This document shows, piece by piece, positions 22,791 to 48,166 of a DNA stretch of 64,000 nucleotides. The DNA is taken from positions 145,702 through 209,701 of IMG/VR virus record IMGVR_UViG_3300020179_000005; one strand, given 5' to 3'. The notes under the pieces were generated by a model, which saw only the letters and a list, made by a program, of their open reading frames with translations, had not been told where the DNA came from and searched no databases. The translations under genes and the position numbers were made by a program. Positions within the stretch are counted from its first letter, which is position 1; each line of letters begins with the position of its first letter.

Positions 22791-22876
22791 GCCCAGGTGG
22801 CGGAACAGGCAGACGCAAGGGGCTTAAACCCCCTCGACTAGAGATAGTCGTACGGGTTCAATTCCCGTCTTGGGCA
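22791..22876 (+). tRNA. trnL: tRNA-Leu(UAA)
   Basis: GCCCAGG/CTTGGGC acceptor, anticodon TAA, long variable arm CGACTA..TAGTCG. Confidence 0.92.
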
Positions 22877-22897
22877 CATATTGGTTAGGGAGGTGTT

Positions 22898-23324: not shown

Positions 23325-24737
23325 ATGAAGAAGATTTTTATTTCACTTATTGTTTTGGCATTAATGCCTTTGTTTGTTTTTTCGAACACAACAAGTGTCA
23401 AAGCAGATACATTACAGGCGTTAGGGCCAGTTAAGTTCAGAATGAATCTTACAAGAAGTTTGTCGCAGATTGGTGCTGTCAAGGCTCATCAGAATCTACA
23501 CAAAGGCAATGGGTCTTTTGTGGTCGTTATAGATTCAGGCGTAGATGTTCAATCTTCATTTTTGTCCAACAAGGTGGCGTTGGAAGCATGTTTTGCAGTA
23601 GCCTGTCCAAATGGTACAACCAAAATGATTGGACAGGGAGCCGCAAAGCCGGTTCACTGGCATGGTACTCATGTGGCAGGAATCGTCGCCGGTTCCAACG
23701 CCAACATGTCAGGAGTCGCACCAGAAGCAAAGATAATTGCAGTAAATATCTTTGACAGATACGGATCTACGTTTGACGGCAATATCATTGCTGCATTGCG
23801 GTGGGTTGATTCGATATCATCCGAATACAACATTGCTGCAGTAAACATGTCTCTTGGCACGACGATGGTATTTAAATCATCTTGCAATAGCTATATTCCA
23901 GATCTTACAAGTATTATCTCTAAACTTAAGTCAAAAAATATTGCCACAGTTGTGTCAGCAGGAAACGCTTATTCTCACGGAATGAGTTCTCCTGCATGCA
24001 TAACCGACACTATCAGTGTAGCTGCAACCTATTATAATAGGGACGAAGTAACTAAGTTTTCCAATGTTCATGAAGATACAGATTTTTCCGCTCCTGGAGA
24101 TAATATATATTCTTCAGAATTGAACGGTTCTTACAGAACTGCTTCAGGTACTTCCATGGCAGCTCCTCACGTTGCTGGTGCTTACGCAGTATACAGATCC
24201 AAGTACGGAGTACAGTCTGTAGACAAAGTAACACAAGACTTTAAGGATAGTTCAATGCCTGCAATAGATGATTTTACATCCATCGTCACAAAAAGAATAG
24301 ACCTTGGATATTTGTTTGGTGACGGTCAAATGCCTTCACCCACAACTACAACAACAACGGTTTTGCGTCCGCCAGTAACCACTATCAAGCCTCCTGTTAC
24401 AACTACAACGGTTGTTGCGCCGGCTCCTCCTGAAGGAGACACTGAGTTTGTTTTGACCGTTCCTGAAATATTGGGCATATACAAAGATGTACACGGAAAA
24501 GATTATCTGTATCTTGATTTCAAGTATACTGGTAAAACAGATCTTCTTTCTGCATACTTATTTGATTGTTCATATTCTGGGTCAAACAATGTTTCAAGAT
24601 CTATTCGTAATAGAGGTCATAGATTAAATTATTTTTACGTTGCTATACCAGTATCTAACATTGATTCATGCAGAATTGCTGCTGTTTCAAAGTCTGGTGT
24701 TGTAGGTCAGTATACTGATTATTTCAAGTTAAAATAA
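23325..24737 (+). CDS. secreted S8 subtilisin-like serine protease with Thr/Pro linker
   Basis: Signal peptide; VIDSG, HGTHVAG, GTSMAAPHVAG catalytic triad motifs. Confidence 0.93.
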   Translation: MKKIFISLIVLALMPLFVFSNTTSVKADTLQALGPVKFRMNLTRSLSQIGAVKAHQNLHKGNGSFVVVIDSGVDVQSSFLSNKVALEACFAVACPNGTTKMIGQGAAKPVHWHGTHVAGIVAGSNANMSGVAPEAKIIAVNIFDRYGSTFDGNIIAALRWVDSISSEYNIAAVNMSLGTTMVFKSSCNSYIPDLTSIISKLKSKNIATVVSAGNAYSHGMSSPACITDTISVAATYYNRDEVTKFSNVHEDTDFSAPGDNIYSSELNGSYRTASGTSMAAPHVAGAYAVYRSKYGVQSVDKVTQDFKDSSMPAIDDFTSIVTKRIDLGYLFGDGQMPSPTTTTTTVLRPPVTTIKPPVTTTTVVAPAPPEGDTEFVLTVPEILGIYKDVHGKDYLYLDFKYTGKTDLLSAYLFDCSYSGSNNVSRSIRNRGHRLNYFYVAIPVSNIDSCRIAAVSKSGVVGQYTDYFKLK

Positions 24738-29723: not shown

Positions 29724-30485
29724 ATGTCTGAGTTTTCGCGTCAGAATGACGATGATTTGTTTGATTACGATCCGTCTAAGGATAAACCAAAGGTATCACA
29801 CGATTATATTTCTTCTTCTTCTAATTCAAAAGTATCTAATGAAGTTTATGATCAGATTACAAAAAGCATTGAAGAAAACGACGATGAAAATTATTTGAAG
29901 ATCAACGGTTTGCGGATAAAATTTTCTCAGGCTATTTTGAATTCTTATGATTATTGGATATCGCCAATCGGCGCCATCTCGTCTTTTGTTACTATATCAC
30001 AAGTTCTTGATCAGTTAACTGGTGGAAGATTTTCCAGTTTATACCTTTACAATTATTTGGAAACCAGTATACTTAGACGCAAACATATTATATATCTTTT
30101 GAGTCAAACATTTGATCAAGTTTCTCGGAACAAAGACGACGACGATTCTTTTAGAGAGTTTTTGGCCAGACTTGATGTGAAGGTTTCTGATTCTTATCTT
30201 CCTACTTACGTAGGTACATTGGTAAGAATTTCCTCTCACATTCTTGCCAAGGACCGCGCAATGTATATCACATTGGCAAATAAACTTGATATTGTACCCA
30301 ATGCGTCTGTACTAGAGTCTGTTTCTTCACCTAGCGAAGTGTACAACAATTCTCAACAGAACGTCAAAGCGGCTTCGGATTGTTTGTTGCAGGAAACATT
30401 CAATAAATCAGTTGACATGGCTTTTGCTGAGAAGTTGAATAATTTGAATGGCACTCAAGTAGATTATCAGCTGCGTAGCATATGA
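29724..30485 (+). CDS. hypothetical protein
   Basis: ORF with SD. Confidence 0.65.
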   Translation: MSEFSRQNDDDLFDYDPSKDKPKVSHDYISSSSNSKVSNEVYDQITKSIEENDDENYLKINGLRIKFSQAILNSYDYWISPIGAISSFVTISQVLDQLTGGRFSSLYLYNYLETSILRRKHIIYLLSQTFDQVSRNKDDDDSFREFLARLDVKVSDSYLPTYVGTLVRISSHILAKDRAMYITLANKLDIVPNASVLESVSSPSEVYNNSQQNVKAASDCLLQETFNKSVDMAFAEKLNNLNGTQVDYQLRSI

Positions 30486-30913
30486 TAAAGTCTGTTGCCA
30501 TTCTTATTGTAACGGCAGTAGCAACAGCGGCTATAAATTATGCCTTGATGCCTACACCATTTGTGTTTTTTATAATACTTGTTCTTTTGGCTCATGAATT
30601 TGGACATTATTTTATATCTTTATTGAACAGAGCAAGTCCTGACTTACCCTATATTATACCGTTACCATTAATTGCAATAGGAATAACAAGAGTACATAAT
30701 TTTCAAGAGCTCAAGCCAAATTCCCAAAAGTCCATACTTTTTGGTGGGCCTTTGTTTGGCGTAATTACAGCTATAAGTATATTTATATATCTCCTTACAA
30801 ATCCAATCATTTCCCCACTTTATATGCTGATAATAGCATTGCTTGAGATCATTTTAAATTATTTCGGTTCTGACGGTTCAAGATACCGCAGAATATCTAA
30901 CAAGGAGTTATGA
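30482..30913 (+). CDS. M50 (site-2 protease)-like membrane metalloprotease
   Basis: LLAHEFGHY (HExxH) inside a TM segment; GGP motif; C-terminal D. Confidence 0.65.
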   Translation: MIKSVAILIVTAVATAAINYALMPTPFVFFIILVLLAHEFGHYFISLLNRASPDLPYIIPLPLIAIGITRVHNFQELKPNSQKSILFGGPLFGVITAISIFIYLLTNPIISPLYMLIIALLEIILNYFGSDGSRYRRISNKEL

Positions 30914-31620: not shown

Positions 31621-32700
31621 ATGGACAAAGTGTCTTACTCATTTGTAAAGCAAGAAGATAGCATTGTCTTTCGTTCCAAGGTACAGGCATTCAACCTTGA
31701 TCATGTAACGGACAAAGACATTCGTTCTTTTTATTTGCAGTTTTCACAGTATGCTGCCTTTGATACTGGTTTGTTACCGTTGGACGGAACTGGTTTGCTT
31801 TGTGTTCGCAAAGCAGGCGAATACACACAGGTTGCCTACCAGTACAAACCAGGTAGTTATTATGTTAACTGGGGGACATACGAAAAGGATCCTGAAGCCA
31901 AAAAGTATCTTTTGGCGCAACCTTATCGAGTGGTTATAATAGATTTTAAGTCCAACAATTTGTTGGGTGCTAGAACGTTTTACACCACTACCCCTGTTAC
32001 GCATCCAGATGTCCAGTTGTATCATGTTAATCTTCCCAACATAAATTGCAGAGGGTACCGCGGCAATGGCGTTGGATGGATTTGTTTGTATCATAATACC
32101 GATTGGAGTAGTCTGACGTTTAATGAGCGTTTGGCGCTTGCTTTGGAGCGTTGTTCCGGTTCTGAAGCATACAACGACAACAATATGTCGGAAACTGACG
32201 GTCCGAGATTCTATCGAGACATGTACCAGAACGATGCTTCTTTTTCCTACATGTGGAATCCCAGCGTTTGGCAGAACAAAACATCTCAGGACGGTTATGA
32301 GTGGACTTTGTTTGCCCCGTGGATTCCTGTTGTAGTTGAGGGTCTCGACCGGCAGGCAGCACATTCAACTTCTTCTGAAGCTGTTCCGCTTACATTTTCA
32401 ATGGCTTTGACTGGTACATACAAATCTTATTACACTGATAAGATGCCATTGAAACCCATAAATGCATTGCAGCGCAATGGAGAGAGCGTAATTACCGATA
32501 TTACCAACTATTTTGTACAGTCTTACAATAATTCTTCAACACAGTATGTTGGTAGGGACATAATGGAGGATAGTAAGAAGTTTAGAGACTCTAGAAAAGA
32601 AGTTAACCAAGGTCAGTTGTTTGAAGAGTCTGAGTCCGAAGAAGATGAAGATCATGATGATGACGACCATGATCAAGGGGGAGAAGAAGGTCCTTTTTAG
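31621..32700 (+). CDS. prokaryotic E2 family D-like ubiquitin-conjugating protein (copy 1)
   Basis: AQPYRVVII...QLYHVNLPNI...GWICL resembles the E2-D 'P.lv...Ly.aP.PNv..G.iC' pattern; lies within the Ubl operon. Confidence 0.65.
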   Translation: MDKVSYSFVKQEDSIVFRSKVQAFNLDHVTDKDIRSFYLQFSQYAAFDTGLLPLDGTGLLCVRKAGEYTQVAYQYKPGSYYVNWGTYEKDPEAKKYLLAQPYRVVIIDFKSNNLLGARTFYTTTPVTHPDVQLYHVNLPNINCRGYRGNGVGWICLYHNTDWSSLTFNERLALALERCSGSEAYNDNNMSETDGPRFYRDMYQNDASFSYMWNPSVWQNKTSQDGYEWTLFAPWIPVVVEGLDRQAAHSTSSEAVPLTFSMALTGTYKSYYTDKMPLKPINALQRNGESVITDITNYFVQSYNNSSTQYVGRDIMEDSKKFRDSRKEVNQGQLFEESESEEDEDHDDDDHDQGGEEGPF

Positions 32701-32801
32701 ATATAAATTCTAAAGAGACTTTCGATGGTGTACCACTTACAATACTGGCTCAAGACTACATAACTGGCAGTATTGATACTGTTGATTTTGACAATACTAC
32801 A

Positions 32802-33587
32802 TTGGTCTATTCCAATACTACTGGATTTTGGTATTCTAAAGATGGGGATTACTTGGCTGTTTGTTCAAATTGCGGTCAAGTACATTTTTGTTTTGAAGAA
32901 AATTATAATAAGTCTAATCCGTATGAAAGTTTTAATATTTGGTACCAAAATCAAGAGGCTTTCAATAATTTTTCTGATATGCCTGTTGTTATTTGTAGTA
33001 CTTGTAAAAAAGATTACATAGATGATATTTCAAAATGTAAATTATGTCTTGTTGATATACCTCCAAAAGAACATTATTCTCATGTTCACGAATTTAAAGA
33101 TACTAATCATTGTAAACATCTTATTTGTAATTCTTGTTCTAGTACTCATTGGTATCACCCTATGATGTGTCTGTGTGGCGAAGCAGTTTCAGAAGTTGAC
33201 ATGTATCAAATCAAACCGATAGTTATAGATGAAATAACTAGCACGCATCATTCAGACGCATTCTTTGCTTTGAAGGATAGGCTTCAACTAGAGCATACCG
33301 ATAGTGTTTATCTTTATGCTACTAAGATTTGTTCTTCTTGTTATTCAGAAAATCCATTTGATTATAATAAATTTATAAATAAGATATCAACTAATATTAA
33401 TATAGAAAGTTTGTCTTGTGTTGCTGATTCTTTGGGTGATATCGAGACAAAATATATACAATTGGTTGAGACTTACTACAAAAAGCCTACAGACGATGAT
33501 GTTGAAGTGTTAGTGCCTGCAATTTATTTACAGGCTCAAATCAAAAGTCACGGCTATGTAGGATATTTCTCTAAAGAAATAGTTTAA
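32802..33587 (+). CDS. Cys-rich Zn-binding protein with RING-like ligand pattern
   Basis: C-x2-C-x21-C-x-H-x2-C-x2-C-x10-C-x-C, plus additional CxxC pairs. Confidence 0.55.
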   Translation: MVYSNTTGFWYSKDGDYLAVCSNCGQVHFCFEENYNKSNPYESFNIWYQNQEAFNNFSDMPVVICSTCKKDYIDDISKCKLCLVDIPPKEHYSHVHEFKDTNHCKHLICNSCSSTHWYHPMMCLCGEAVSEVDMYQIKPIVIDEITSTHHSDAFFALKDRLQLEHTDSVYLYATKICSSCYSENPFDYNKFINKISTNINIESLSCVADSLGDIETKYIQLVETYYKKPTDDDVEVLVPAIYLQAQIKSHGYVGYFSKEIV

Positions 33588-33615: not shown

Positions 33616-35388
33616 ATGACAGTACCACAACTGAATGACCTGAAGCATTTTTGGATGCCTTCAGGTGTTCCATGTTTTATCGCAGATCGTCAAGACATAT
33701 GCGATGTCGTGGAGAATATGGGTTTTCAAATATATTATTTGCTTTCGAACCACAAAACCGAAACCAAGTCGGTCACAAATAGTACTCCTTCTGCGTCGCC
33801 GCATAATTATGGTTATACCACTTATGGAAATTCAACCGTTACGTCGATAAAGATAGAAAAGAAGCCTAGACTTTTCAAGGTCGTAAACAATTACGTAGGT
33901 AGGGTAGTTGCGGTAAGTAATGACGAGTTTCCTGCTGAATTCATTGACATTGAAGACGAATGTACTTATAGCATGCCCCTCATTCCCATTGATGTTGTCA
34001 ATAAGCTGGATGAGTTCTTTAGGCTTGTACACTCACAGCACGGTACGGAATCAATCGTTATACTTACATACGATACTACCAAGACCGGACCAGCAGGTTG
34101 GGGTGTTCTGGTTCCGGAACAAACAAACACCGCAGCCCATTGCAAGTATGATGCCGACAGCATCGTTGCATTAAAGCCCGAGAACGTCATGATTGTTGGT
34201 TCGGTACATTCGCACCCGGATATGCCTGCCTATGCTTCAGGCACAGATCATGACGATCAAGCTGATTTTGATGGTTTACACATAACCTATGGTTGGCAAA
34301 AGAATGTAAACAATGGTGCCACACAGTATTATGCCGAGTTACAAATGGCAGGCACAGGATACAAACTTGACATGGAAGATGTTTTTGAAACTGTAACGGT
34401 GCAGAAAGATCCTGATCCTGAAGTTGTGGAGTGGTCCACTAAAGTAAAAAAAGCCTACCCCCCCTACCAGGGGGGATACAACACCATTCAAAATGGTCGG
34501 CACACGCAAACAACTCAAACGACGACACCACAACAGCAGCCTGGGCTTCAGACTGGGAAGGCGGTTGGGGGATCTAGAACTCCTTTGAAGCAGGCCAGAT
34601 TTCTGGAAAAGTACGAGGATATGCTGGCAGCTTATCATATGCCGTACAACGCCGTTCTGGCTATTGAGGCAGAGCTTGATGAGCGGAACAGAGGACATTG
34701 TCTTGTGTGCGAAACCGAGATTAATATCTCCGATGTAAGAATCGGTTTGTGTCCCACATGCGAAGTTCCCCTTGTTCATCCAGAAGACCATATGTCTACG
34801 ATTGTTGAAAAGGTAGAGTCTTATTTGATCGACAATTATTTGCCGTATACTACTCCCGTTTATTTGTATTCGTTTACGGATGATAATCTTCCAAGCATAA
34901 TGAATATCAGTGACGAATTGAGATATTATACGGGTACGGCAATGAAGCCTATCGTTCAGAATTCTACCGTCAAAAAGGCGGATGTTTCTGACCTGTCTGA
35001 TTATGTTCATTTGCCAACACATACAGAGGACGTAATACCCATAGACAGTGCTTTCAGCTCTGGACATACTGCTTGTTGTGGTGTAAGGATAGAGAATGCT
35101 GAAGCTGATTGCGTTTGTGCCGTGAGACTGATGCCCGATGATGTTGTGGATTTTGATAGTTATTTGGCTGAAAATGCTGATATATATGTTCCGAATTCTC
35201 CATGCCATGATTGTACCCATTTTTATTCCATCAAATGCCCTGCGTTTAGAGAGCTTTTGACAGAATGGGTAAGGTCTAAAGATAGTTTCAACATTATTCT
35301 TTACACACATTCCGTCAATGGTTGCAGCAATTATGAACATTATGCAAATTCTTTTGCTGAAATTCAATATAATGACGAAATTAGATAG
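33616..35388 (+). CDS. JAB/MPN isopeptidase with Cys-rich C-terminal extension
   Basis: GTESIVIL (E) ... VGSVHSHPDMPAYASGTD (HxH-x7-S-x2-D). Confidence 0.85.
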   Translation: MTVPQLNDLKHFWMPSGVPCFIADRQDICDVVENMGFQIYYLLSNHKTETKSVTNSTPSASPHNYGYTTYGNSTVTSIKIEKKPRLFKVVNNYVGRVVAVSNDEFPAEFIDIEDECTYSMPLIPIDVVNKLDEFFRLVHSQHGTESIVILTYDTTKTGPAGWGVLVPEQTNTAAHCKYDADSIVALKPENVMIVGSVHSHPDMPAYASGTDHDDQADFDGLHITYGWQKNVNNGATQYYAELQMAGTGYKLDMEDVFETVTVQKDPDPEVVEWSTKVKKAYPPYQGGYNTIQNGRHTQTTQTTTPQQQPGLQTGKAVGGSRTPLKQARFLEKYEDMLAAYHMPYNAVLAIEAELDERNRGHCLVCETEINISDVRIGLCPTCEVPLVHPEDHMSTIVEKVESYLIDNYLPYTTPVYLYSFTDDNLPSIMNISDELRYYTGTAMKPIVQNSTVKKADVSDLSDYVHLPTHTEDVIPIDSAFSSGHTACCGVRIENAEADCVCAVRLMPDDVVDFDSYLAENADIYVPNSPCHDCTHFYSIKCPAFRELLTEWVRSKDSFNIILYTHSVNGCSNYEHYANSFAEIQYNDEIR

Positions 35389-35391
35389 AAG

Positions 35392-36159
35392 GTGGATAAA
35401 ATGCAATCAAAAAGATTTGTTATCGTAGGTACAGGCGGCATAGGCACGTGGCTTGCTGCTGGTCTTGTACGTCTTTTGGAATGGAAAATGCCTGGTTCTG
35501 GTTTGATTCTCGTAGACGGAGACAACTACGAAGAGAAGAACAAGGAGCGCCAGGATTTTACAAAGTTAGGCAACAAGGCTGTTGTGAAAGCGGCCGAGTT
35601 GACGCCTCAGTTTCCCAAGACCACGATCATACCGGTACCAAAGTGGGTCGTGTCTGACGACAACACTGGAGTTTCCGCTGATAGTGATTCTCCCAGAATT
35701 AAGGCTTCCGACTTGTTGATTGACGGCGACGTTGTTTTTGCTGTCGTCGATAATTTTGCTGCTCGCAAGATACTTTTCGACGCCGCTGCAAAACTTATAA
35801 ACGTCGATGTATTCACAGGCGGTAACGACGATGCTTTGTTCGGTTCCATCTATCATTACCAAAGAAGAGATGGCAAGAACATAACTGAACATCCTGTCGT
35901 TTTTCATCCTGAATATGAAAATCCTCCTGACAAAAATCCAGGCGAACTTTCTTGTCAGGAAAGATCTAAGCTTGAGGGCGGTACGCAATTATTGGCTACC
36001 AATATGGCGGTGGCCGCATTCATACTTGGTAGGGTTCATAAGACCATTGTTCTAGATCAAAGTCCCGAAGAAACCGAAATCTATTTTGATTTGGGTTTGG
36101 GAAAATCTGAGCCCTACAACAGAATGGTTTCGCAGGTCAATCAACCTGCGATGGTATAA
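35392..36159 (+). CDS. ThiF/E1-like Ubl-activating enzyme
   Basis: VIVGTGGIG, VDGD.YEEKNKERQ, NKA, VDNFAARK, and LSC (candidate catalytic Cys). Confidence 0.88.
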   Translation: MDKMQSKRFVIVGTGGIGTWLAAGLVRLLEWKMPGSGLILVDGDNYEEKNKERQDFTKLGNKAVVKAAELTPQFPKTTIIPVPKWVVSDDNTGVSADSDSPRIKASDLLIDGDVVFAVVDNFAARKILFDAAAKLINVDVFTGGNDDALFGSIYHYQRRDGKNITEHPVVFHPEYENPPDKNPGELSCQERSKLEGGTQLLATNMAVAAFILGRVHKTIVLDQSPEETEIYFDLGLGKSEPYNRMVSQVNQPAMV

Positions 36160-36184: not shown

Positions 36185-36436
36185 ATGGATCAGTCAGCAT
36201 CGCAGAATCAACCTTCTGCATCGCAAGGTATTGCCAATGTTCGCTTTGGTGTATACAATCAGCCAAGCAACATTGGAGGTAAAACAGTTTCTCAGGCAAG
36301 AGAGCAGTTTTCTCGACTGTGGGGCATTCCCACGGACGCTGTTGCCTACAAAGGCAAGGACAAACTTGATGAAAACTATGTCATCCAGCCAGGCGACAAC
36401 GTGGAGTTCCACCGTCGCGCAGGCGAGAAGGGCTGA
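36185..36436 (+). CDS. ubiquitin-like (beta-grasp) modifier ending in RRAGEKG
   Basis: GKTVSQAR...YVIQPGDNVEF pattern, C-terminal Gly, directly after E1. Confidence 0.75.
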   Translation: MDQSASQNQPSASQGIANVRFGVYNQPSNIGGKTVSQAREQFSRLWGIPTDAVAYKGKDKLDENYVIQPGDNVEFHRRAGEKG

Positions 36437-36535: not shown

Positions 36536-38134
36536 ATGTTAAACGAAATAAAGATTGGTTATCCTGCTTTATGGATAAAAACCACTGAGTATTCTAGGGT
36601 TATTAGTAATATCGTGTCTTTTGATTTCAGAGACTATTATATGATAGATCCACAGCAAGGGTTTTCCAAGTACGTTGATTCAGATTGGAAACCGGTGCTC
36701 GTAGAATTTACTGACGAATCAGGCACAGTCGCTCATGTTCACACTTATGATTTATCTATTGCCGTAAATCATATAAAGAATAATACCGTTTCTGGAGGCA
36801 AGGCGCCTACGTTTTTGCTTCCCATACATGGCAAGCCAGAGGTTAATTTGTTTAGGTACGTGCCTATGGTGTATCAACTTGTTGAAAAGTATCGCAAGTC
36901 CTTTTGGACCGACACCATGTATGAAGAAATGCAGTTCATATTTCTTTCCGCTTTCGATGTGCCTGTTGATTATCCCAACCTTTTCAAAGTCATAGGTCAT
37001 GGAGTTCCCACTTCCGAAGAGTTGTTCCACATTGTGGATCATATTAATGTGTCTTCACATGGTCGTTTTGTTAATCCAGAAACCGTAAAAGATCTCGTAA
37101 AATCTGGCATTGGTCTAACGGAAACTGATTTCATCGATTATTGTTTGACTTCAATAGTCGACAACGGTCTTTTGGATCCAAAGTACATATACGAGAGAAA
37201 GATGGCCACCGTTAAACAAAAGGGCATTCTTGAGATCATAAAGCCTCGGTTGACATTTGCCGAAATCGGTGGTCTTGATAACATCAAGAACATAATCAAA
37301 CGTACCGCTTTCCTTAGGAACAATAGACAGAAAGCTGAGTCTTTTGGTGTGTCTCCAATCAGAAGAATATTGATGGTTGGTGTCCCCGGCACTGGCAAGT
37401 CGGCCATCTGTCAAGCTACCGCTAGTGAACTTGGGCTTGATCTTGCCAGAACCGGCATCAGCCAAGTCATGAATTCTTTTGTTGGTCAGTCAGAAGCCAA
37501 CATGCGTGCGGTGTTTAATCAGATTAGAGCTATGACGCCTTTGTGCGTTTGGATTGACGAGTTTGGTCGTGATCTTTCTGGTGGTTCGAGTTCGTCACAA
37601 GTTGACGCCGGTACCACAGATCGTGTCCATGGCGAGTTCTTAACTGGATTACAGGAATTACCAGAAGATACATTTTTGATGTGTGCCGCAAATCAACTTG
37701 ATAATTTGCGACCAGAGATGCTTCGCGCTGATCGTTTCGACAAGATAGTGTTCGTTGGTTTGCCATCTTACAGTGAGCGTGTAGAGATACTAAAGATATA
37801 TTTGTCTGGTATAGATACCGATCACGAGTACGATTATGATGCCCTTGCAAGAGTAACCGAAAATTTCACCGGTGCAGAGATTTCTGCTTTGATTAAAGAA
37901 GTCAAGTTCTTTGTTGTTGCCGATGAATTTCGTGCAATCAACACCCAGGACATTATGGCTCATGCCCCTAATGTTAAGAACATAATTTGGAATAAACATA
38001 GAGATATGATAAAATCAATGTACAGTTATGCCTTGGCACAATGGGATTGGGCTTCTTCTGAACAACAGATCGATGCACAAAACGTACTATCTGGTCGTAC
38101 CGTTGATCAGCCGCAGGTTACTTGGAAAATATAA
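36536..38134 (+). CDS. AAA+ ATPase (Ycf46/CDC48-like, one intact ATPase domain)
   Basis: IGGLDNIK, GVPGTGKS, WIDEFG, AANQL..LRPEMLRADRFD. Confidence 0.9.
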   Translation: MLNEIKIGYPALWIKTTEYSRVISNIVSFDFRDYYMIDPQQGFSKYVDSDWKPVLVEFTDESGTVAHVHTYDLSIAVNHIKNNTVSGGKAPTFLLPIHGKPEVNLFRYVPMVYQLVEKYRKSFWTDTMYEEMQFIFLSAFDVPVDYPNLFKVIGHGVPTSEELFHIVDHINVSSHGRFVNPETVKDLVKSGIGLTETDFIDYCLTSIVDNGLLDPKYIYERKMATVKQKGILEIIKPRLTFAEIGGLDNIKNIIKRTAFLRNNRQKAESFGVSPIRRILMVGVPGTGKSAICQATASELGLDLARTGISQVMNSFVGQSEANMRAVFNQIRAMTPLCVWIDEFGRDLSGGSSSSQVDAGTTDRVHGEFLTGLQELPEDTFLMCAANQLDNLRPEMLRADRFDKIVFVGLPSYSERVEILKIYLSGIDTDHEYDYDALARVTENFTGAEISALIKEVKFFVVADEFRAINTQDIMAHAPNVKNIIWNKHRDMIKSMYSYALAQWDWASSEQQIDAQNVLSGRTVDQPQVTWKI

Positions 38135-43273: not shown

Positions 43274-44488
43274 ATGTCAAGTTTGATATCAATATTTGAT
43301 GGTACTACCGCTTATCACAGCACGAACACAAACTTTAAGGTCGTCGTTACTGATCATAACGATGAGTCGGTTAGTTTTTCTGGCTATGATGCTGTTAGTT
43401 ATCTGTTAGGTACAGTGTTTTCTGGGTTCAGTGGTAGTGTTCTTGATGGTAGAAATTCCGGTGTTTTACCTCCGGGCGTAAGAATTATTGACAGCAATTA
43501 TGTACTGTTTGAGCGCCCCCCGTGTTATCAAAACATTTTTTACAACACCGATAAAGTACATTCTAAAATGTCTGATAGCACCATGCATGTGTACAGGATT
43601 CCTGTGCCATGGCAGATATATATTGCTAGGTTCGATTCTAATTATTATTTAACAGACGTAAACATGTTCTTTTCTTCTGCTTCATTGACTGAAGAAACAC
43701 AGCAGTTATGTTTGCCACCATTGCCCAATTTTTATACAAACGGGCAATTGTGCAGACCCTTTTTTGCTGAGATGCAGGATGTAGAAAGATATCAGAAGAA
43801 TATTTCTGGTGTTATTGCGTCAGCTTATGATTGGGTTTGGAACAATGGAACCAACAATGACTTGAATGAAGCTGTGGTTCACATTAACTTACAATCTGTA
43901 TATCCTAAGTTGGAATCTACTGGGTTCAGTTTGGAATCTTACACTAGTGCTGTCAAGGACACGGTGTTTAAGCATGTATCTTATAATGACTATACGAGCA
44001 TGTTTGCCAATCCGTATGGCGCGGTGTACTACGCCGCCCCTCAAGTTATGACGATACTTTCTGCGTGGGAAAAAATACCGTTAGAAGAAATTTTGAGTGT
44101 TGTTTGGCCCGCTTCTTCTGTTGAGCAGCATTTTCCTTCCAGTGCTTACAAGCCATCGGGTATAGGTGATGAATTGTATGAACATCCTTCTTATTACGAT
44201 TGGCTAAACGATTGGGCTCATGATTATTACGAAGGAGAGGATCCAGAAGATATCGCGCACATGATTGAGAATGGAGATTATGACGGCGACGCATATTATC
44301 AGTACGTCCTTAATAGCGGTAAGATATCCCTTAAGCCGTATGTATACAATTATCTTACTTGTGAAAATGTATTGAAGAATATATCTTCGGAAAGTAGCAC
44401 TTTGGTTGCGATAAAGTCTAGATACAATTCATTTGTTTCTGCCGCTTTCATACAGAAGGCTAAAAAGTCCAAAAAGACAGAAGTTTAA
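43274..44488 (+). CDS. prokaryotic E2 family D-like protein (copy 3)
   Basis: VLPPGVR..LFERPP..IPVPWQ..LPPLPNFYTNGQLCR..TNNDL. Confidence 0.65.
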   Translation: MSSLISIFDGTTAYHSTNTNFKVVVTDHNDESVSFSGYDAVSYLLGTVFSGFSGSVLDGRNSGVLPPGVRIIDSNYVLFERPPCYQNIFYNTDKVHSKMSDSTMHVYRIPVPWQIYIARFDSNYYLTDVNMFFSSASLTEETQQLCLPPLPNFYTNGQLCRPFFAEMQDVERYQKNISGVIASAYDWVWNNGTNNDLNEAVVHINLQSVYPKLESTGFSLESYTSAVKDTVFKHVSYNDYTSMFANPYGAVYYAAPQVMTILSAWEKIPLEEILSVVWPASSVEQHFPSSAYKPSGIGDELYEHPSYYDWLNDWAHDYYEGEDPEDIAHMIENGDYDGDAYYQYVLNSGKISLKPYVYNYLTCENVLKNISSESSTLVAIKSRYNSFVSAAFIQKAKKSKKTEV

Positions 44489-45124: not shown

Positions 45125-45539
45125 TCCAAGAAACCTAATCAACATCACAGGCGGTGTCGTAGCTGACCCCGAGTTAATCAATGACAAAATTGCCAAGTTT
45201 CGTTTGGCGGTTGATTACGCCGGCCAAGAAAAAGGCGGAGACAACAATTCTGGTTATTTTGATATTGTTTATTATCTCAAGGATGCAAACGGTTTTGCAA
45301 GTAAGAATGCATCTTTTATGCACGGTCAAATCTCTGATTCCAAGATCAAGAAAGGTTCTAAACTAACAATTGTTGGTCGTTTGGTTCAGGAAAGATGGAA
45401 GCAGGAAGATCAGAATAGAAGCAAGGTTGTCATAGTTGCTGAGCATATTTCTTATGCTGCTACTGCAGGTTCTTCAAAGTCTTCTAGCACTAACGAAACT
45501 GCTACGGTAGGTTCGTCTTCGGTTCCAGATAGCTTCTAA
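45117..45539 (+). CDS. ssb: single-stranded DNA-binding protein
   Basis: NLINITGGVVADPE, FRLAVD, KKGSKLTIVGRL.QERW, SKVVIVAE. Confidence 0.88.
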   Translation: MIDPRNLINITGGVVADPELINDKIAKFRLAVDYAGQEKGGDNNSGYFDIVYYLKDANGFASKNASFMHGQISDSKIKKGSKLTIVGRLVQERWKQEDQNRSKVVIVAEHISYAATAGSSKSSSTNETATVGSSSVPDSF

Positions 45540-46309
45540 TGCCGGATTTTGACGAAGATAATCTAAATTCGTTAATCCAAGAAGCTTTAGCCGAAAAAGG
45601 CACAAGTCAGTCTCATGCTTTTGCGGTTAATCACCTTGGTCATGGTGACTCGCAGCTTTTGTCTGTTGTCGCAAAAAGATTATCTGACTATTTGCCTGAA
45701 TCTTCTATCGACGCTTTCTTACACGAACTAAGAGTCGATCTTGTTTCTGGTAAGTCTAAATCTACCATAAAAGATCTTCACACTGTTGTGTTAAATTGTA
45801 GAAAGTGCGCTATTGCTTCCAAGCCTGAATTGCCGAAATGGAATTCTACTAATCCTAAAGTTGCAATAGTGATCGAAAGTCCTTCACTTGATTCAAATTC
45901 AATCGGTTTCTTGGTTGACAAAATCAAACAGGTTGGGTTTAAATCCGATCAACTTTGTTTAACTTACGTCAACAGATGTCCAAAGAGTGTCAAATACGAA
46001 AATCAAGAAGTTATAAATTGTGCTCCTTATTTGCATTCTGAGTTACAGCTGTTGCGCCCAAGCGTTATAATTACAATGGGATCTTTAGCTACTTCTGTTT
46101 TATTTGGCACGGAAGTAAAAATAAAGGATTATCGTGGAAATTTAACGGCCTTGGGTTATTGGATGGTGATGCCCATGTATTCACCAGGCTATGCGTCAAA
46201 GTTTGAATCCATGACAGAACAGTTTATTGCTGATTTAGTACAGGTTTATAAATATATAAATAATATACACATCAAAAAGGAACCCCATCATGCAGGCAAA
46301 GCAGTATAA
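45539..46309 (+). CDS. udg: uracil-DNA glycosylase family 4-like
   Basis: CRKC, IVIESP, TYVNRC, CAPYL..EL.LL.P.VIITMG. Confidence 0.8.
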   Translation: MPDFDEDNLNSLIQEALAEKGTSQSHAFAVNHLGHGDSQLLSVVAKRLSDYLPESSIDAFLHELRVDLVSGKSKSTIKDLHTVVLNCRKCAIASKPELPKWNSTNPKVAIVIESPSLDSNSIGFLVDKIKQVGFKSDQLCLTYVNRCPKSVKYENQEVINCAPYLHSELQLLRPSVIITMGSLATSVLFGTEVKIKDYRGNLTALGYWMVMPMYSPGYASKFESMTEQFIADLVQVYKYINNIHIKKEPHHAGKAV

Positions 46310-47536: not shown

Positions 47537-48166
47537 ATGACTACCATAGTGGGTATACAGGGCGATAATTTTTCTGTGGTTTGTTCTGATTCGCGTATAT
47601 CTACCGTTGATGATGAAGGTGTCATTTCTCAAATTACTACTTTGAAAGATGGAAACGGCAAAGTTGCAGTGAATGGAAAGTACCTTTTAGGTGCGGCGGG
47701 AGACATGAGGGCGATTAATCTTTTGCATCATGTTTATCAGCCTCCGGCTGTACCTCCGGCAACGGTCGGTAAAAAGTTAGATCAGTTTTTTACTTCTAAG
47801 GTTGTGCCTTCGATAAGAGAGTGTTTTGAACAACATGGATATGCTTTGCCTGATACCAATGAAAAAAAGCATATAGCAGAGAACGATTCTACTGTTTTGA
47901 TTTCTGTTGCAGGAGTAATATACATACTTGATGGAGACTATTCTTGGACTTCTGATGCGCAGAATTTTTATGCTATAGGCACAGGGTCTTCTTATGCTCT
48001 GGGTGCCTTGCAGGTCATTAGAGGGAAAAGAAAGATATCCATAAATCAAGCTAAGACTTTGGCCCTTAAGGCCGTCAACGTCGCCGCAAGGTTTGATCCA
48101 GGCACTGGAGCTCCTTTTCATACTTTTGTGCAGGAAACGCCTAAAGTAGGCAAGAGACGTAGGTAG
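47537..48166 (+). CDS. proteasome beta/HslV-like Ntn threonine peptidase
   Basis: Met-Thr-Thr N-terminus, DSR, GAAG, AIGTGSSYALG, D..TG. Confidence 0.85.
   Translation: MTTIVGIQGDNFSVVCSDSRISTVDDEGVISQITTLKDGNGKVAVNGKYLLGAAGDMRAINLLHHVYQPPAVPPATVGKKLDQFFTSKVVPSIRECFEQHGYALPDTNEKKHIAENDSTVLISVAGVIYILDGDYSWTSDAQNFYAIGTGSSYALGALQVIRGKRKISINQAKTLALKAVNVAARFDPGTGAPFHTFVQETPKVGKRRR

What the first reader, a model, noticed from the sequence alone, without database searches (positions are those of the whole stretch)
32802..33587. Candidate RING-type E3 ligase inside the Ubl operon
Seen: CKLC-x21-CKH-LI-CNSC matches the first six ligands of the C3HC4 RING pattern. The last pair is CLC (C-x-C) rather than C-x2-C, and additional CxxC pairs flank it. 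The gene sits between the E2-like and JAB genes. Known: RING domains are rare in prokaryotic Ubl operons. Inference: a substrate-selecting E3 would make this a near-complete E1-E2-E3 cascade in a virus of bacteria.
Basis: partly seen in the sequence, partly recalled or inferred. Interest (0 to 1): 0.62.

Follow-up and report, generated by a model that had tools for sequence, protein, structure and literature searches.

The report
Frameshift-fused E2 zinc-finger tail, not RING
The supposed RING E3 gene of this giant phage is most likely the zinc-finger tail of the neighbouring E2-like enzyme, joined to it by a conserved -1 ribosomal frameshift, and the RING-like spelling is a peculiarity of this one lineage.

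Summary
The Cys/His pattern is real: C79xxC82-x21-C104xH106xxC109xxC112-x10-C123xC125 in ORF 32802-33587. It does not hold as a RING. Ligands 3 and 4 (C104, H106) are absent from every other lineage; an 88%-identical relative has Ser at 104. No RING profile matches, and the fold searches are inconclusive.

The family conserves six Cys pairs. Across relatives these are gained and lost as adjacent pairs of pairs, which indicates sequential C4 zinc modules rather than a cross-brace.

The ORF has no conserved start codon. Its frame is open, coding and conserved back to the stop of the upstream E2-like gene (31621-32700). In all nine related lineages that gene ends on the invariant CCTTTTTAR (slippery C/T_CCT_TTT plus stop), and the zinc ORF is always in the -1 frame. 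In more distant phages the same Cys-rich module is fused in frame to the E2-like domain.

Best reading: programmed -1 frameshifting makes a bare E2-like protein (359 aa) and an E2-like::zinc-finger fusion (about 655 aa). The tail evolves fastest in the cassette (28% identity against 95% for the Ubl). I infer that it is a targeting (E3-like) module, not a RING-type E2 activator.

The parts
31621..32700 (+). E2-like gene, zero frame, 359 aa. It has an acidic tail and ends ...G-P-F-stop. This is the termination product and the N-terminal part of the proposed fusion.
   Evidence: ORF. About 180 homologues, all unnamed and without Pfam domains. By eye, H135-x-N137 ... C155 ... W162-S163 resembles the E2 HPN/Cys/WSP signature. 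The Atlas nearest cluster has 13% Prok-E2_D members. No Pfam, PDB or NCBIfam hit.
32691..32697 (+). Slippery heptamer T_CCT_TTT (C_CCT_TTT in most relatives): the proposed -1 frameshift site.
   Evidence: CCTTTTTAR is invariant in 9 lineages; the junction Pro codon is the only one of 12 invariant Pro columns with a fixed codon.
32698..32700 (+). TAG stop of the E2-like frame, directly 3' of the slippery run ('shifty stop'). In the -1 frame, TTA (Leu) is read at 32697-32699.
   Evidence: The stop is always TAA or TAG in split-type loci.
32694..33587 (+). The -1-frame zinc-finger ORF (297 codons plus stop): the C-terminal part of the proposed 655-aa fusion.
   Evidence: The same Cys-rich module is fused in frame in relatives.
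32694..32801 (+). Start-less conserved extension (36 codons) upstream of the mechanical TTG start. It is part of a predicted beta-rich N-terminal subdomain.
   Evidence: No ATG/GTG/TTG here. Conserved as protein. Lies in the best-predicted part of the AF2 model (pLDDT 68-77). Aligns to in-frame tails from HMM position about 20. Synonymous:non-synonymous changes 9:10 against L049.
32862..33005 (+). Zinc module P3/P4: C21, C24 and C65, C68.
   Evidence: Conserved in at least 90% of members. The two pairs co-occur as a unit across the clade.
33036..33137 (+). Zinc module P5/P6: C79, C82 (knuckle) and C109, C112 (start of a helix, followed by invariant W117). Treble-clef-like.
   Evidence: AF2 secondary structure. 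Weak matches to small zinc fingers over model residues 110-154. The module occurs without P7/P8 in L013-type and L055.
33111..33119 (+). C104 and H106, the supposed RING ligands 3 and 4. Specific to this lineage.
   Evidence: Position 104 is Q/A/T/I/K/H/S and position 106 is R/W in relatives. L049 has S104 at 88% identity. Absent in fused-type relatives.
33168..33341 (+). Zinc module P7/P8: C123-x-C125-G and C177-x2-C180.
   Evidence: Invariant in the family. P7 and P8 are present together or absent together across the clade.
33616..35388 (+). JAB/MPN+ metalloprotease with a Cys-rich C-terminal half.
   Evidence: PF14464 E 1.6e-6. The JAMM-type HSHP...D motif is visible. Syntenic in all loci.
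35392..36159 (+). E1-like ThiF-family adenylating enzyme.
   Evidence: PF00899 E 1.2e-11. 88% identical to L003.
36185..36436 (+). 83-aa candidate Ubl ending in ...GEKG.
   Evidence: No profile hit. Position, size and C-terminal Gly fit a Ubl. 95% identical across lineages.
36536..38134 (+). AAA+ ATPase of the cassette.
   Evidence: PF00004 E 2.7e-23 and AAA_lid_3. Syntenic.

Best explanation
ORF 32802-33587 is not a free-standing RING E3. It is the 3' part of a two-frame gene. Ribosomes translating the E2-like gene (31621-32700) reach T_CCT_TTT_TAG at 32691-32700. Most terminate and give a 359-aa E2-like protein ending in an acidic ...GPF tail. A fraction slip back one base on the U-run (tRNA-Phe re-pairs UUU to UUU, helped by the adjacent stop), read UUA-Leu and continue in the -1 frame to 33587. 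That gives a fusion of about 655 aa: E2-like domain, acidic linker, zinc-finger array. The array holds three sequential four-Cys zinc modules (C21/C24+C65/C68; C79/C82+C109/C112; C123/C125+C177/C180) and a C-terminal alpha/beta region. It is the fastest-evolving and most modular part of the Ubl-E1-E2-JAB-AAA cassette. I infer that it aims the E2-like enzyme at particular targets, making an E2 with a built-in, exchangeable E3-like adaptor, rather than a RING that activates a separate E2~Ubl. Shown computationally: conservation, lack of a start codon, the junction motif, in-frame fused relatives, and the modular Cys pattern. Inferred: the frameshift itself and its efficiency, zinc binding, E2 activity, and the targeting role.
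For: (1) No conserved start. The frame is open from 10-28 nt before the E2 stop in every locus. The first ATG/GTG/TTG lies 2 to 117 codons after the junction depending on lineage; in L003 it comes only after three conserved Cys pairs.
(2) The start-less stretch is coding. It is conserved as protein, well predicted, and homologous to in-frame tails of L055/L017/L013/L014 (E 4e-8 to 6e-3 at Z=1e6; none in shuffled controls).
(3) CCTTTTTAR is invariant in 9 lineages, and the zinc frame is always -1. Among 173 invariant-residue columns of the same E2 genes only 13% keep one codon. The junction Pro is the only fixed Pro codon of 12. Relatives that merely end in PF use CCT TTT in 12 of 36 cases.
(4) Most relatives carry the Cys-rich module fused in frame to the E2-like domain (455-660 aa). 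On a quick tree the split type is one group (SH-aLRT 100) nested among fused forms.
(5) RING ligands 3/4 are not conserved. Cys pairs are gained and lost as adjacent units P1P2, P3P4, P5P6, P7P8.
(6) Identity between the window and L003: Ubl 95%, E1 88%, AAA 70%, E2-like 66%, JAB 52%, zinc part 28%.
Against: There is no protein or ribosome-profiling evidence for the fusion. No conserved downstream stimulatory RNA structure was found: the hairpin in the window (z -3.9) starts about 24 nt downstream and is not conserved, and Rfam finds nothing. The window's heptamer is T_CCT_TTT, so P-site re-pairing of tRNA-Pro needs a G-U pair. Two or three lineages (L050/L104, P0006) have a GTG or other start 2-5 codons after the junction, so reinitiation could serve there. 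All split-type loci descend from one ancestor, so junction conservation is retention, not repeated origin. PF at the C-terminus is also a protein-level motif in relatives. The E2-like assignment rests on a motif read by eye, gene context and an Atlas lead; no profile or structure supports it. The zinc-site pairing is inferred from phyletic patterns, not from coordinates.
Confidence: 0.6

Rival explanations
1. Free-standing RING-type E3. The 261-aa protein starts at TTG 32802, folds as a cross-braced C3HC4-like RING using C79, C82, C104, H106, C109, C112, C123 and C125, binds the E2-like protein non-covalently and stimulates Ubl transfer.
For: The spacing fits the RING consensus except for the last pair. 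The only PDB sequence hit, though non-significant (E 5.8), is the PCGF6 RING. Invariant W117 four residues after C112 recalls the E2-contacting Trp of some RINGs (own knowledge). Weak fold matches include cross-brace domains. An Atlas rank-30 lead points to Prok-RING_2 at score 0.78.
Against: C104 and H106 are absent in all other lineages, including an 88%-identical one. No RING HMM matches any member or fused relative. C123/C125 co-vary in presence with C177/C180, and P5/P6 exist without P7 in relatives. RING fold matches reach only Z 2.3. The TTG start is not conserved and the coding frame continues upstream.
Confidence: 0.07
2. Separate non-RING zinc-finger adaptor. The zinc protein is made on its own, by reinitiation or initiation at a late or non-canonical start coupled to termination of the E2-like gene, and works with the E2-like protein non-covalently.
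For: L050/L104 have GTG overlapping the junction (TAGTG) and P0006 has a called start 9 nt after the stop. The window has TTG 36 codons in. Iyer et al. 2006 already suggested uncharacterised zinc-finger proteins in bacterial E1-E2-JAB neighbourhoods as E3-like adaptors (PMC1779556).
Against: Most lineages have no canonical start for 12-117 codons of conserved coding sequence, and near-cognate codons are not at conserved positions. This view does not explain the invariant CCTTTTTAR or the fixed -1 relation. In-frame fused relatives show the covalent arrangement is the norm.
Confidence: 0.2
3. Same fusion, but made by transcriptional slippage: RNA polymerase drops one U on the T5 run, giving an in-frame mRNA.
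For: The junction is a homopolymer run, and the outcome (two isoforms) would be the same.
Against: From own knowledge, efficient transcriptional slippage normally needs runs of about 8-9 A/T, and here there are five T. The flanking CC and the stop are also conserved, which fits the ribosomal X_XXY_YYZ-plus-stop logic.
Confidence: 0.05
4. Decaying remnant: an ancestral in-frame fusion was broken by a frameshift mutation and the downstream ORF is no longer translated.
For: Fused forms are ancestral on the quick tree, and a sister clade has lost the module entirely.
Against: An intact 289-317-codon ORF with 12 conserved Cys persists in 9 lineages that have diverged to 25-39% identity. Changes against L049 are biased towards synonymous (49:33 in the body).
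Confidence: 0.03

Closest known systems
RING-HC (C3HC4) E3 domains, including prokaryotic RING fingers (Pfam Prok-RING_1/2/4) and the Caldiarchaeum E1/E2/small-RING cascade (PMC5654768)
   Same: Cys/His spacing in this one sequence. Location in an operon with E1-like, E2-like, Ubl and JAB genes. A knuckle-plus-helix zinc site (C79/C82 + C109/C112) like RING site 1.
   Different: Ligands 3/4 are not conserved. The last pair is C-x-C and pairs, by phyletic pattern, with a distal CxxC. No profile match. The zinc sites are modular and sequential. The module is tethered covalently to the E2-like domain.
E2/E3 hybrid enzymes of eukaryotes (UBE2O, BIRC6; own knowledge)
   Same: One polypeptide joins an E2 core to a substrate-recognition region, so no separate E3 is needed.
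   Different: Those are eukaryotic and unrelated in sequence, have no zinc-finger array of this type, and are not made by recoding.
Programmed -1 frameshifting in phage and bacterial genes (lambda tail chaperones G/GT, dnaX tau/gamma; 'shifty stops' of Weiss et al. 1987; own knowledge)
   Same: A slippery X_XXY_YYZ site at the end of the upstream frame, two products sharing an N-terminus in a fixed ratio, and conservation of the site across diverged phages.
   Different: The gene class differs (a Ubl-conjugation enzyme). No conserved downstream structure was seen; the adjacent stop is the only obvious stimulator.
Uncharacterised zinc-finger proteins in bacterial E1-E2-JAB neighbourhoods, proposed as E3-like adaptors (Iyer, Burroughs, Aravind 2006, PMC1779556)
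   Same: A Cys-rich protein of unknown type inside a prokaryotic Ubl-conjugation gene cluster, suspected of an E3-like role.
   Different: No sequence relationship was tested or shown. Here the module is phage-borne, fused to the E2-like protein and highly variable.
Bacterial Ubl-conjugation defence operons (Bil, Bub, CBASS Cap2/Cap3; PMC10557695, PMC11601596, PMC10097602)
   Same: The same set of E1, E2, Ubl and JAB-type protease.
   Different: Those are host defence systems; this cassette sits in 170-270-kb phage genomes. PADLOC models hit only the E1 weakly. Those systems are not described with a zinc-finger tail or recoding.

Membership tests
RING finger (C3HC4/RING-HC) | Eight zinc ligands with spacing C-x2-C-x(9-39)-C-x(1-3)-H-x(2-3)-C-x2-C-x(4-48)-C-x2-C | tested here: inconclusive
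   The window sequence fits the first six ligands; the last pair is C-x-C rather than C-x2-C.
RING finger (C3HC4/RING-HC) | All eight ligand positions conserved among homologues | tested here: not met
   C104 and H106 are replaced in every other lineage. L049, 88% identical, has S104.
RING finger (C3HC4/RING-HC) | Cross-brace topology (pairs 1+3 and 2+4 share the two zincs) | tested here: inconclusive
   The AF2 model has pLDDT 60 and no coordinates were available. Foldseek finds nothing. VIA best Z is 3.6 (FYVE/PHD) and RING Z 2.3. The phyletic co-occurrence of adjacent pairs argues for sequential sites.
RING finger (C3HC4/RING-HC) | Match to RING-type profile HMMs (zf-RING, zf-C3HC4, Prok-RING) | tested here: not met
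   No RING family at E up to 10 in any of 10 members, and none at E up to 0.1 in 10 fused relatives.
RING finger (C3HC4/RING-HC) | Binds E2~Ubl and stimulates discharge | not testable with these tools
   This is a biochemical property. The one complex prediction gave no verdict.
Programmed -1 ribosomal frameshift site | Slippery heptamer X_XXY_YYZ in the zero frame within the overlap | tested here: met
   C_CCT_TTT in most lineages; T_CCT_TTT in the window lineage (W/L005) and L049.
Programmed -1 ribosomal frameshift site | Downstream ORF in the -1 frame, open from the site, conserved, without its own conserved start | tested here: met
Programmed -1 ribosomal frameshift site | Site conserved beyond what the encoded residues require | tested here: met
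   The only fixed Pro codon of 12 invariant Pro columns; 13% background codon invariance. 12/36 CCT TTT in relatives without the -1 ORF.
Programmed -1 ribosomal frameshift site | Stimulatory element (downstream hairpin/pseudoknot or upstream SD-like sequence) | tested here: inconclusive
   No conserved structure. The conserved adjacent stop codon may serve instead.
Programmed -1 ribosomal frameshift site | Trans-frame protein detected | not testable with these tools
   Needs expression and mass spectrometry.
E2 / UBC-like (for the upstream gene) | HPN-like motif, catalytic Cys, W-S-P-like motif in order | tested here: met
   H135-V-N137, C155 and W162-S163 are invariant in 28 homologues. The comparison with the E2 consensus is from my own knowledge.
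E2 / UBC-like (for the upstream gene) | Match to UQ_con or Prok-E2 profiles, or to solved E2 structures | tested here: not met
   No hits. Prok-E2_D weakly hits another ORF (43274-44488). The Atlas lead gives 13% Prok-E2_D members in the nearest cluster.
E2 / UBC-like (for the upstream gene) | UBC fold | not tested

The most novel reading that the evidence does not exclude
A clade of 170-270-kb phages from environmental metagenomes carries its own ubiquitin-like targeting pathway: Ubl, E1, E2-like, JAB, AAA+ unfoldase, and a proteasome beta-like subunit about 10 kb away. Specificity would be set by a hypervariable, modular zinc-finger array attached to the E2. In one subclade, a programmed -1 frameshift doses bare E2 against targeted E2 from a single locus. 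This would be a viral E2/E3-hybrid system for marking (and perhaps degrading) chosen host or phage proteins.
Probability: 0.25. Interest if true: 0.85.

Novelty: new variant of a known kind. Interest (0 to 1): 0.6.

Why it matters
If the frameshift fusion is real, it would be, as far as my literature searches show, an undescribed case of recoding inside a Ubl-conjugation enzyme. It would also be a prokaryotic-virus analogue of E2/E3 hybrid enzymes. It gives a concrete, testable explanation of how a phage Ubl cascade could choose targets without a RING or HECT E3: a fast-evolving, exchangeable zinc-finger tail on the E2. It also corrects gene models. In public assemblies the zinc ORF is called with arbitrary, truncated starts (172-309 aa for the same protein). 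Finally, it warns against calling RINGs from a single-sequence Cys/His pattern inside a Cys-rich scaffold.

Tried and rejected
- Family scans: Pfam, PHROGs, PADLOC and NCBIfam found nothing for the zinc protein.
- Phage records: tblastn against 50,697 records gave no match.
- Homologue searches: the word-index searches gave only a near-identical cluster and a few relatives. The exhaustive representative search gave 9 clusters.
- PDB by sequence: only PCGF6 RING at E 5.8. The profile search gave TAX1BP1 UBZ at E 0.25. I rejected this as non-significant, and the His positions are not conserved.
- Structure prediction: single-sequence AF2 was unusable (pLDDT 35). The 10-sequence model reached pLDDT 60.
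- Fold searches: Foldseek PDB and BFVD and the Atlas shape search gave no significant match. VIA wide gave only Z of 3.6 or less. The Atlas feature search scored 0.79 or less.
- Complex prediction (E2-like 1-335 + 3 Zn + zinc protein): no verdict, score 0.00. This is not evidence either way.
- Rfam on the junction: nothing.
- RNA folds: no conserved stimulator.
One genome search failed.
- E2-like protein: no match to UQ_con, Prok-E2_D, PDB or NCBIfam. hhalign to the weak Prok-E2_D-like ORF 43274-44488 gave E 0.017 but probability 2.7%, which I treat as not significant.
- Pseudogene reading: considered and rejected (see rivals).
- The motif CCTTTTTAR is not rare in the genome by itself (5 seen, about 4 expected). 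Only its position and conservation carry weight.

Full report
**Observation.** The window is the last 64 kb of a 209.7-kb virus record with direct terminal repeats. ORF 32802-33587 (+) is listed with a TTG start and gives 261 aa. It contains C79-x2-C82-x21-C104-x-H106-x2-C109-x2-C112-x10-C123-x-C125, flanked by C21/C24, C65/C68 and C177/C180. The six-ligand pattern is unique among the six-frame ORFs of the genome. It arises in 0.03% of composition-preserving shuffles. It arises in 0.6% of shuffles that keep the twelve family-conserved Cys fixed.

**Is it a RING?** No profile library recognises the protein. The family is small. There is one near-identical cluster by word search and nine clusters in the exhaustive search.

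Alignments A1 and A2 show twelve conserved Cys in six pairs, plus invariant P87, D100, N102, W117, G126 and E131 in ORF numbering. The supposed ligands 3 and 4 are not conserved. Position 104 is Q, A, T, I, K, H or S, and position 106 is H, R or W. L049 is 88% identical to the window protein and has Ser at 104.

Fused-type relatives that share the CxxC-x6-CxCG motif never have C-x-H before it. No RING family matches any member or fused relative.

AF2 with ten sequences reached only pLDDT 60. Foldseek found nothing. VIA-align gave at best Z 3.6 to FYVE/PHD-type fingers, Z about 3 to small ribosomal zinc fingers over model residues 110-154, and Z 2.3 to RINGs. All of these are below a meaningful level. 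The RING reading is not supported at the family level, and the fold evidence is inconclusive.

**The start problem and the junction.** Upstream of 32802 the frame stays open to 32673 and encodes a segment conserved in relatives (..A-[IL]-x-Y-x-T-G .. L-V-Y-S..), yet it has no ATG, GTG or TTG. In nine lineages the first canonical start lies anywhere from 2 to 117 codons after the junction. Public gene calls for the same protein therefore range from 172 to 309 aa.

In every one of these loci the upstream gene of about 355 aa ends ...P-F-stop on the invariant nine bases CCTTTTTAR. The zinc frame is -1 relative to it, opens 10-28 nt before that stop, and reads (P/S)-F-L. C_CCT_TTT is a classical X_XXY_YYZ slippery heptamer; the window has T_CCT_TTT at 32691-32697 followed by TAG.

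Among 173 invariant-residue columns of the eight split-type E2-like genes, only 13% keep a single codon. The junction Pro is the only one of twelve invariant Pro columns with a fixed codon. Relatives that end in P-F but lack the -1 ORF use CCT TTT in 12 of 36 cases.

The start-less stretch lies in the best-predicted part of the model (pLDDT 68-77). Against L049 it shows 9 synonymous to 10 non-synonymous changes. No conserved downstream RNA structure was found. The adjacent stop is the only conserved candidate stimulator ('shifty stop', own knowledge).

**Relatives with the module fused in frame.** Searching with the E2-like protein returned about 90 loci from phage-sized contigs of 170-270 kb. 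Three architectures exist:
- (a) In most, the E2-like ORF is 455-660 aa: E2-like domain, acidic linker, then a Cys-rich extension with 8-21 Cys, all in frame.
- (b) In the window's group, the E2-like ORF stops after the acidic linker and the Cys-rich part follows in the -1 frame.
- (c) In four loci, the E2-like gene is followed directly by the JAB gene with no zinc module.

The zinc-family HMM matches the in-frame tails of L055 (E 4e-8 with Z set to 1e6), L017, L013 and L014. These matches start at HMM position about 20, inside the start-less stretch. There were no hits in shuffled tails.

On a quick maximum-likelihood tree of the E2-like domain (59 rows, SH-aLRT, midpoint root for drawing only), the split type is a single group (support 100). 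It is sister to the E2-only group (93) and nested among fused forms. So the covalent arrangement is the norm. The split arrangement arose once and has kept its junction while the zinc part diverged to 25-39% identity.

**Architecture of the zinc part.** Writing the tails as strings of Cys motifs shows units that come and go as adjacent pairs of pairs:
- P1P2+P3P4 only (L020 type).
- Up to P6, without P7 and P8 (L013 type, L055).
- P1 to P8 (L024 type).
- P3 to P8 (the window).

P7 is C-x-C-G, or C-P-x-G-H in some relatives. It is present exactly when P8 (a distal CxxC) is present. If the retained pairs still bind zinc, this pattern requires sequential sites (P3+P4, P5+P6, P7+P8) and excludes a cross-brace spanning P5 to P8 or P4 to P7. 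In the window that means three C4 sites. C123/C125 would pair with C177/C180, not with C104/H106. This is inference from phyletic patterns, not from coordinates.

**Context.** The order is conserved in all loci: 120-aa gene, E2-like, zinc ORF, JAB (about 600 aa), ThiF-type E1 (253 aa), 83-aa Ubl candidate ending in Gly, AAA+ ATPase, 207-aa and 126-aa genes. Between the window and L003 the identities are Ubl 95%, E1 88%, AAA 70%, E2-like 66%, JAB 52% and zinc part 28%.

The E2-like label is not backed by any profile or solved structure. It rests on three things:
- The invariant H-x-N ... C ... W-S series (the comparison with E2 consensus is from my own knowledge).
- The gene context.
- An Atlas cluster in which 13% of members carry Prok-E2_D.

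**Mechanism proposed.** Termination at 32698-32700 gives the 359-aa E2-like protein. A -1 slip on the U-run gives the fusion of about 655 aa. Both isoforms would take the Ubl from the E1. The zinc array, which is the variable and modular part, would direct the fusion to particular targets: an E3-like function without the RING mechanism. Frameshifting would set the ratio of bare to targeted E2.

Rivals are:
- Separate initiation or reinitiation of a non-RING adaptor (0.2).
- A true free-standing RING (0.07).
- Transcriptional slippage (0.05).
- A decaying remnant (0.03).

**Comparison and novelty.** The closest known things are RING and prokaryotic RING E3s (same context, pattern not upheld), eukaryotic E2/E3 hybrids (same logic), and phage -1 frameshift genes such as lambda G/GT (same recoding logic). 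A further precedent is the unnamed zinc-finger proteins that Iyer et al. 2006 suspected to be E3-like adaptors in bacterial E1-E2-JAB clusters. Literature searches found no description of this phage cassette, of an E2 with a zinc-finger tail, or of recoding in it. I rate it a new variant of known kinds.

**Limits.**
- I had no model coordinates, no third structure job, and no read data.
- The complex prediction gave no verdict and is not used as evidence.
- All frameshift evidence is comparative.

Noticed in passing
window 47537-48166 (+): A 209-aa ORF matches the proteasome subunit family (PF00227 E 4.4e-8; archaeal proteasome beta TIGR03634 E 5.7e-8; HslV weaker). It lies about 10 kb downstream of the Ubl-E1-JAB-AAA cassette. 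Together these suggest a phage-borne Ubl-plus-unfoldase-plus-peptidase set.
   Followed up: partly
window 43274-44488 (+); L103 in G002: A 404-aa ORF gives the only (weak) Prok-E2_D match in the genome (14.5 bits, E 0.003 for the genome; E 0.069 in hmmscan). The equivalent gene in a related phage genome gives the same weak hit. This may be a second E2-like gene.
   Followed up: partly
C-termini of E2-like proteins: window 32686-32697; L013, L022, L024, L055 and others: Nearly all E2-like proteins of the clade, whether bare or fused, end in an acidic stretch plus P-F (or L-F). Most split-type zinc ORFs also end in ..x-L-F or ..x-V-F. This looks like a conserved C-terminal docking motif. The window's own zinc ORF has lost it (ends KEIV).
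   Followed up: partly
window 22791-22877 (+): A phage tRNA-Leu(UAA) is encoded, one of 7 tRNA genes in the window. It decodes UUA, the first codon read after the proposed -1 slip, where it would compete with release factor at UAG/UAA. This may be coincidence in an AT-rich genome.
   Followed up: no
L012, L053, L054, L063: A sister group of phages has the E2-like gene followed directly by the JAB gene, with no zinc module. The module is therefore dispensable for the core cassette.
   Followed up: yes
window 33616-35388 (+), residues about 330-590: The JAB protein has a long Cys-rich C-terminal half (a CxxC...CxxC ribbon and further Cys clusters). It also has a weak hit to PRTRC system protein A (E 0.005).
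   Followed up: no
window 32722-32785 (+): A strong local RNA hairpin (the 101-nt fold has z -3.9) starts about 24 nt after the slippery site. It is not conserved in the other lineages.
   Followed up: partly
window 23325-24737 and 30482-30913 (+): A subtilase (Peptidase_S8, E 1.6e-34) and a small M50-like membrane metalloprotease (HExxH; E 5.6e-6) lie upstream of the cassette. The M50-like gene is syntenic in all related loci.
   Followed up: no
window 36185-36436 (+): The 83-aa Ubl candidate is 95% identical between lineages whose zinc tails share 28%. It always ends ...RRAGEKG.
   Followed up: partly
window 45539-46309 (+): An ORF with a uracil-DNA glycosylase superfamily domain (PF03167, E 5.9e-11).
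   Followed up: no
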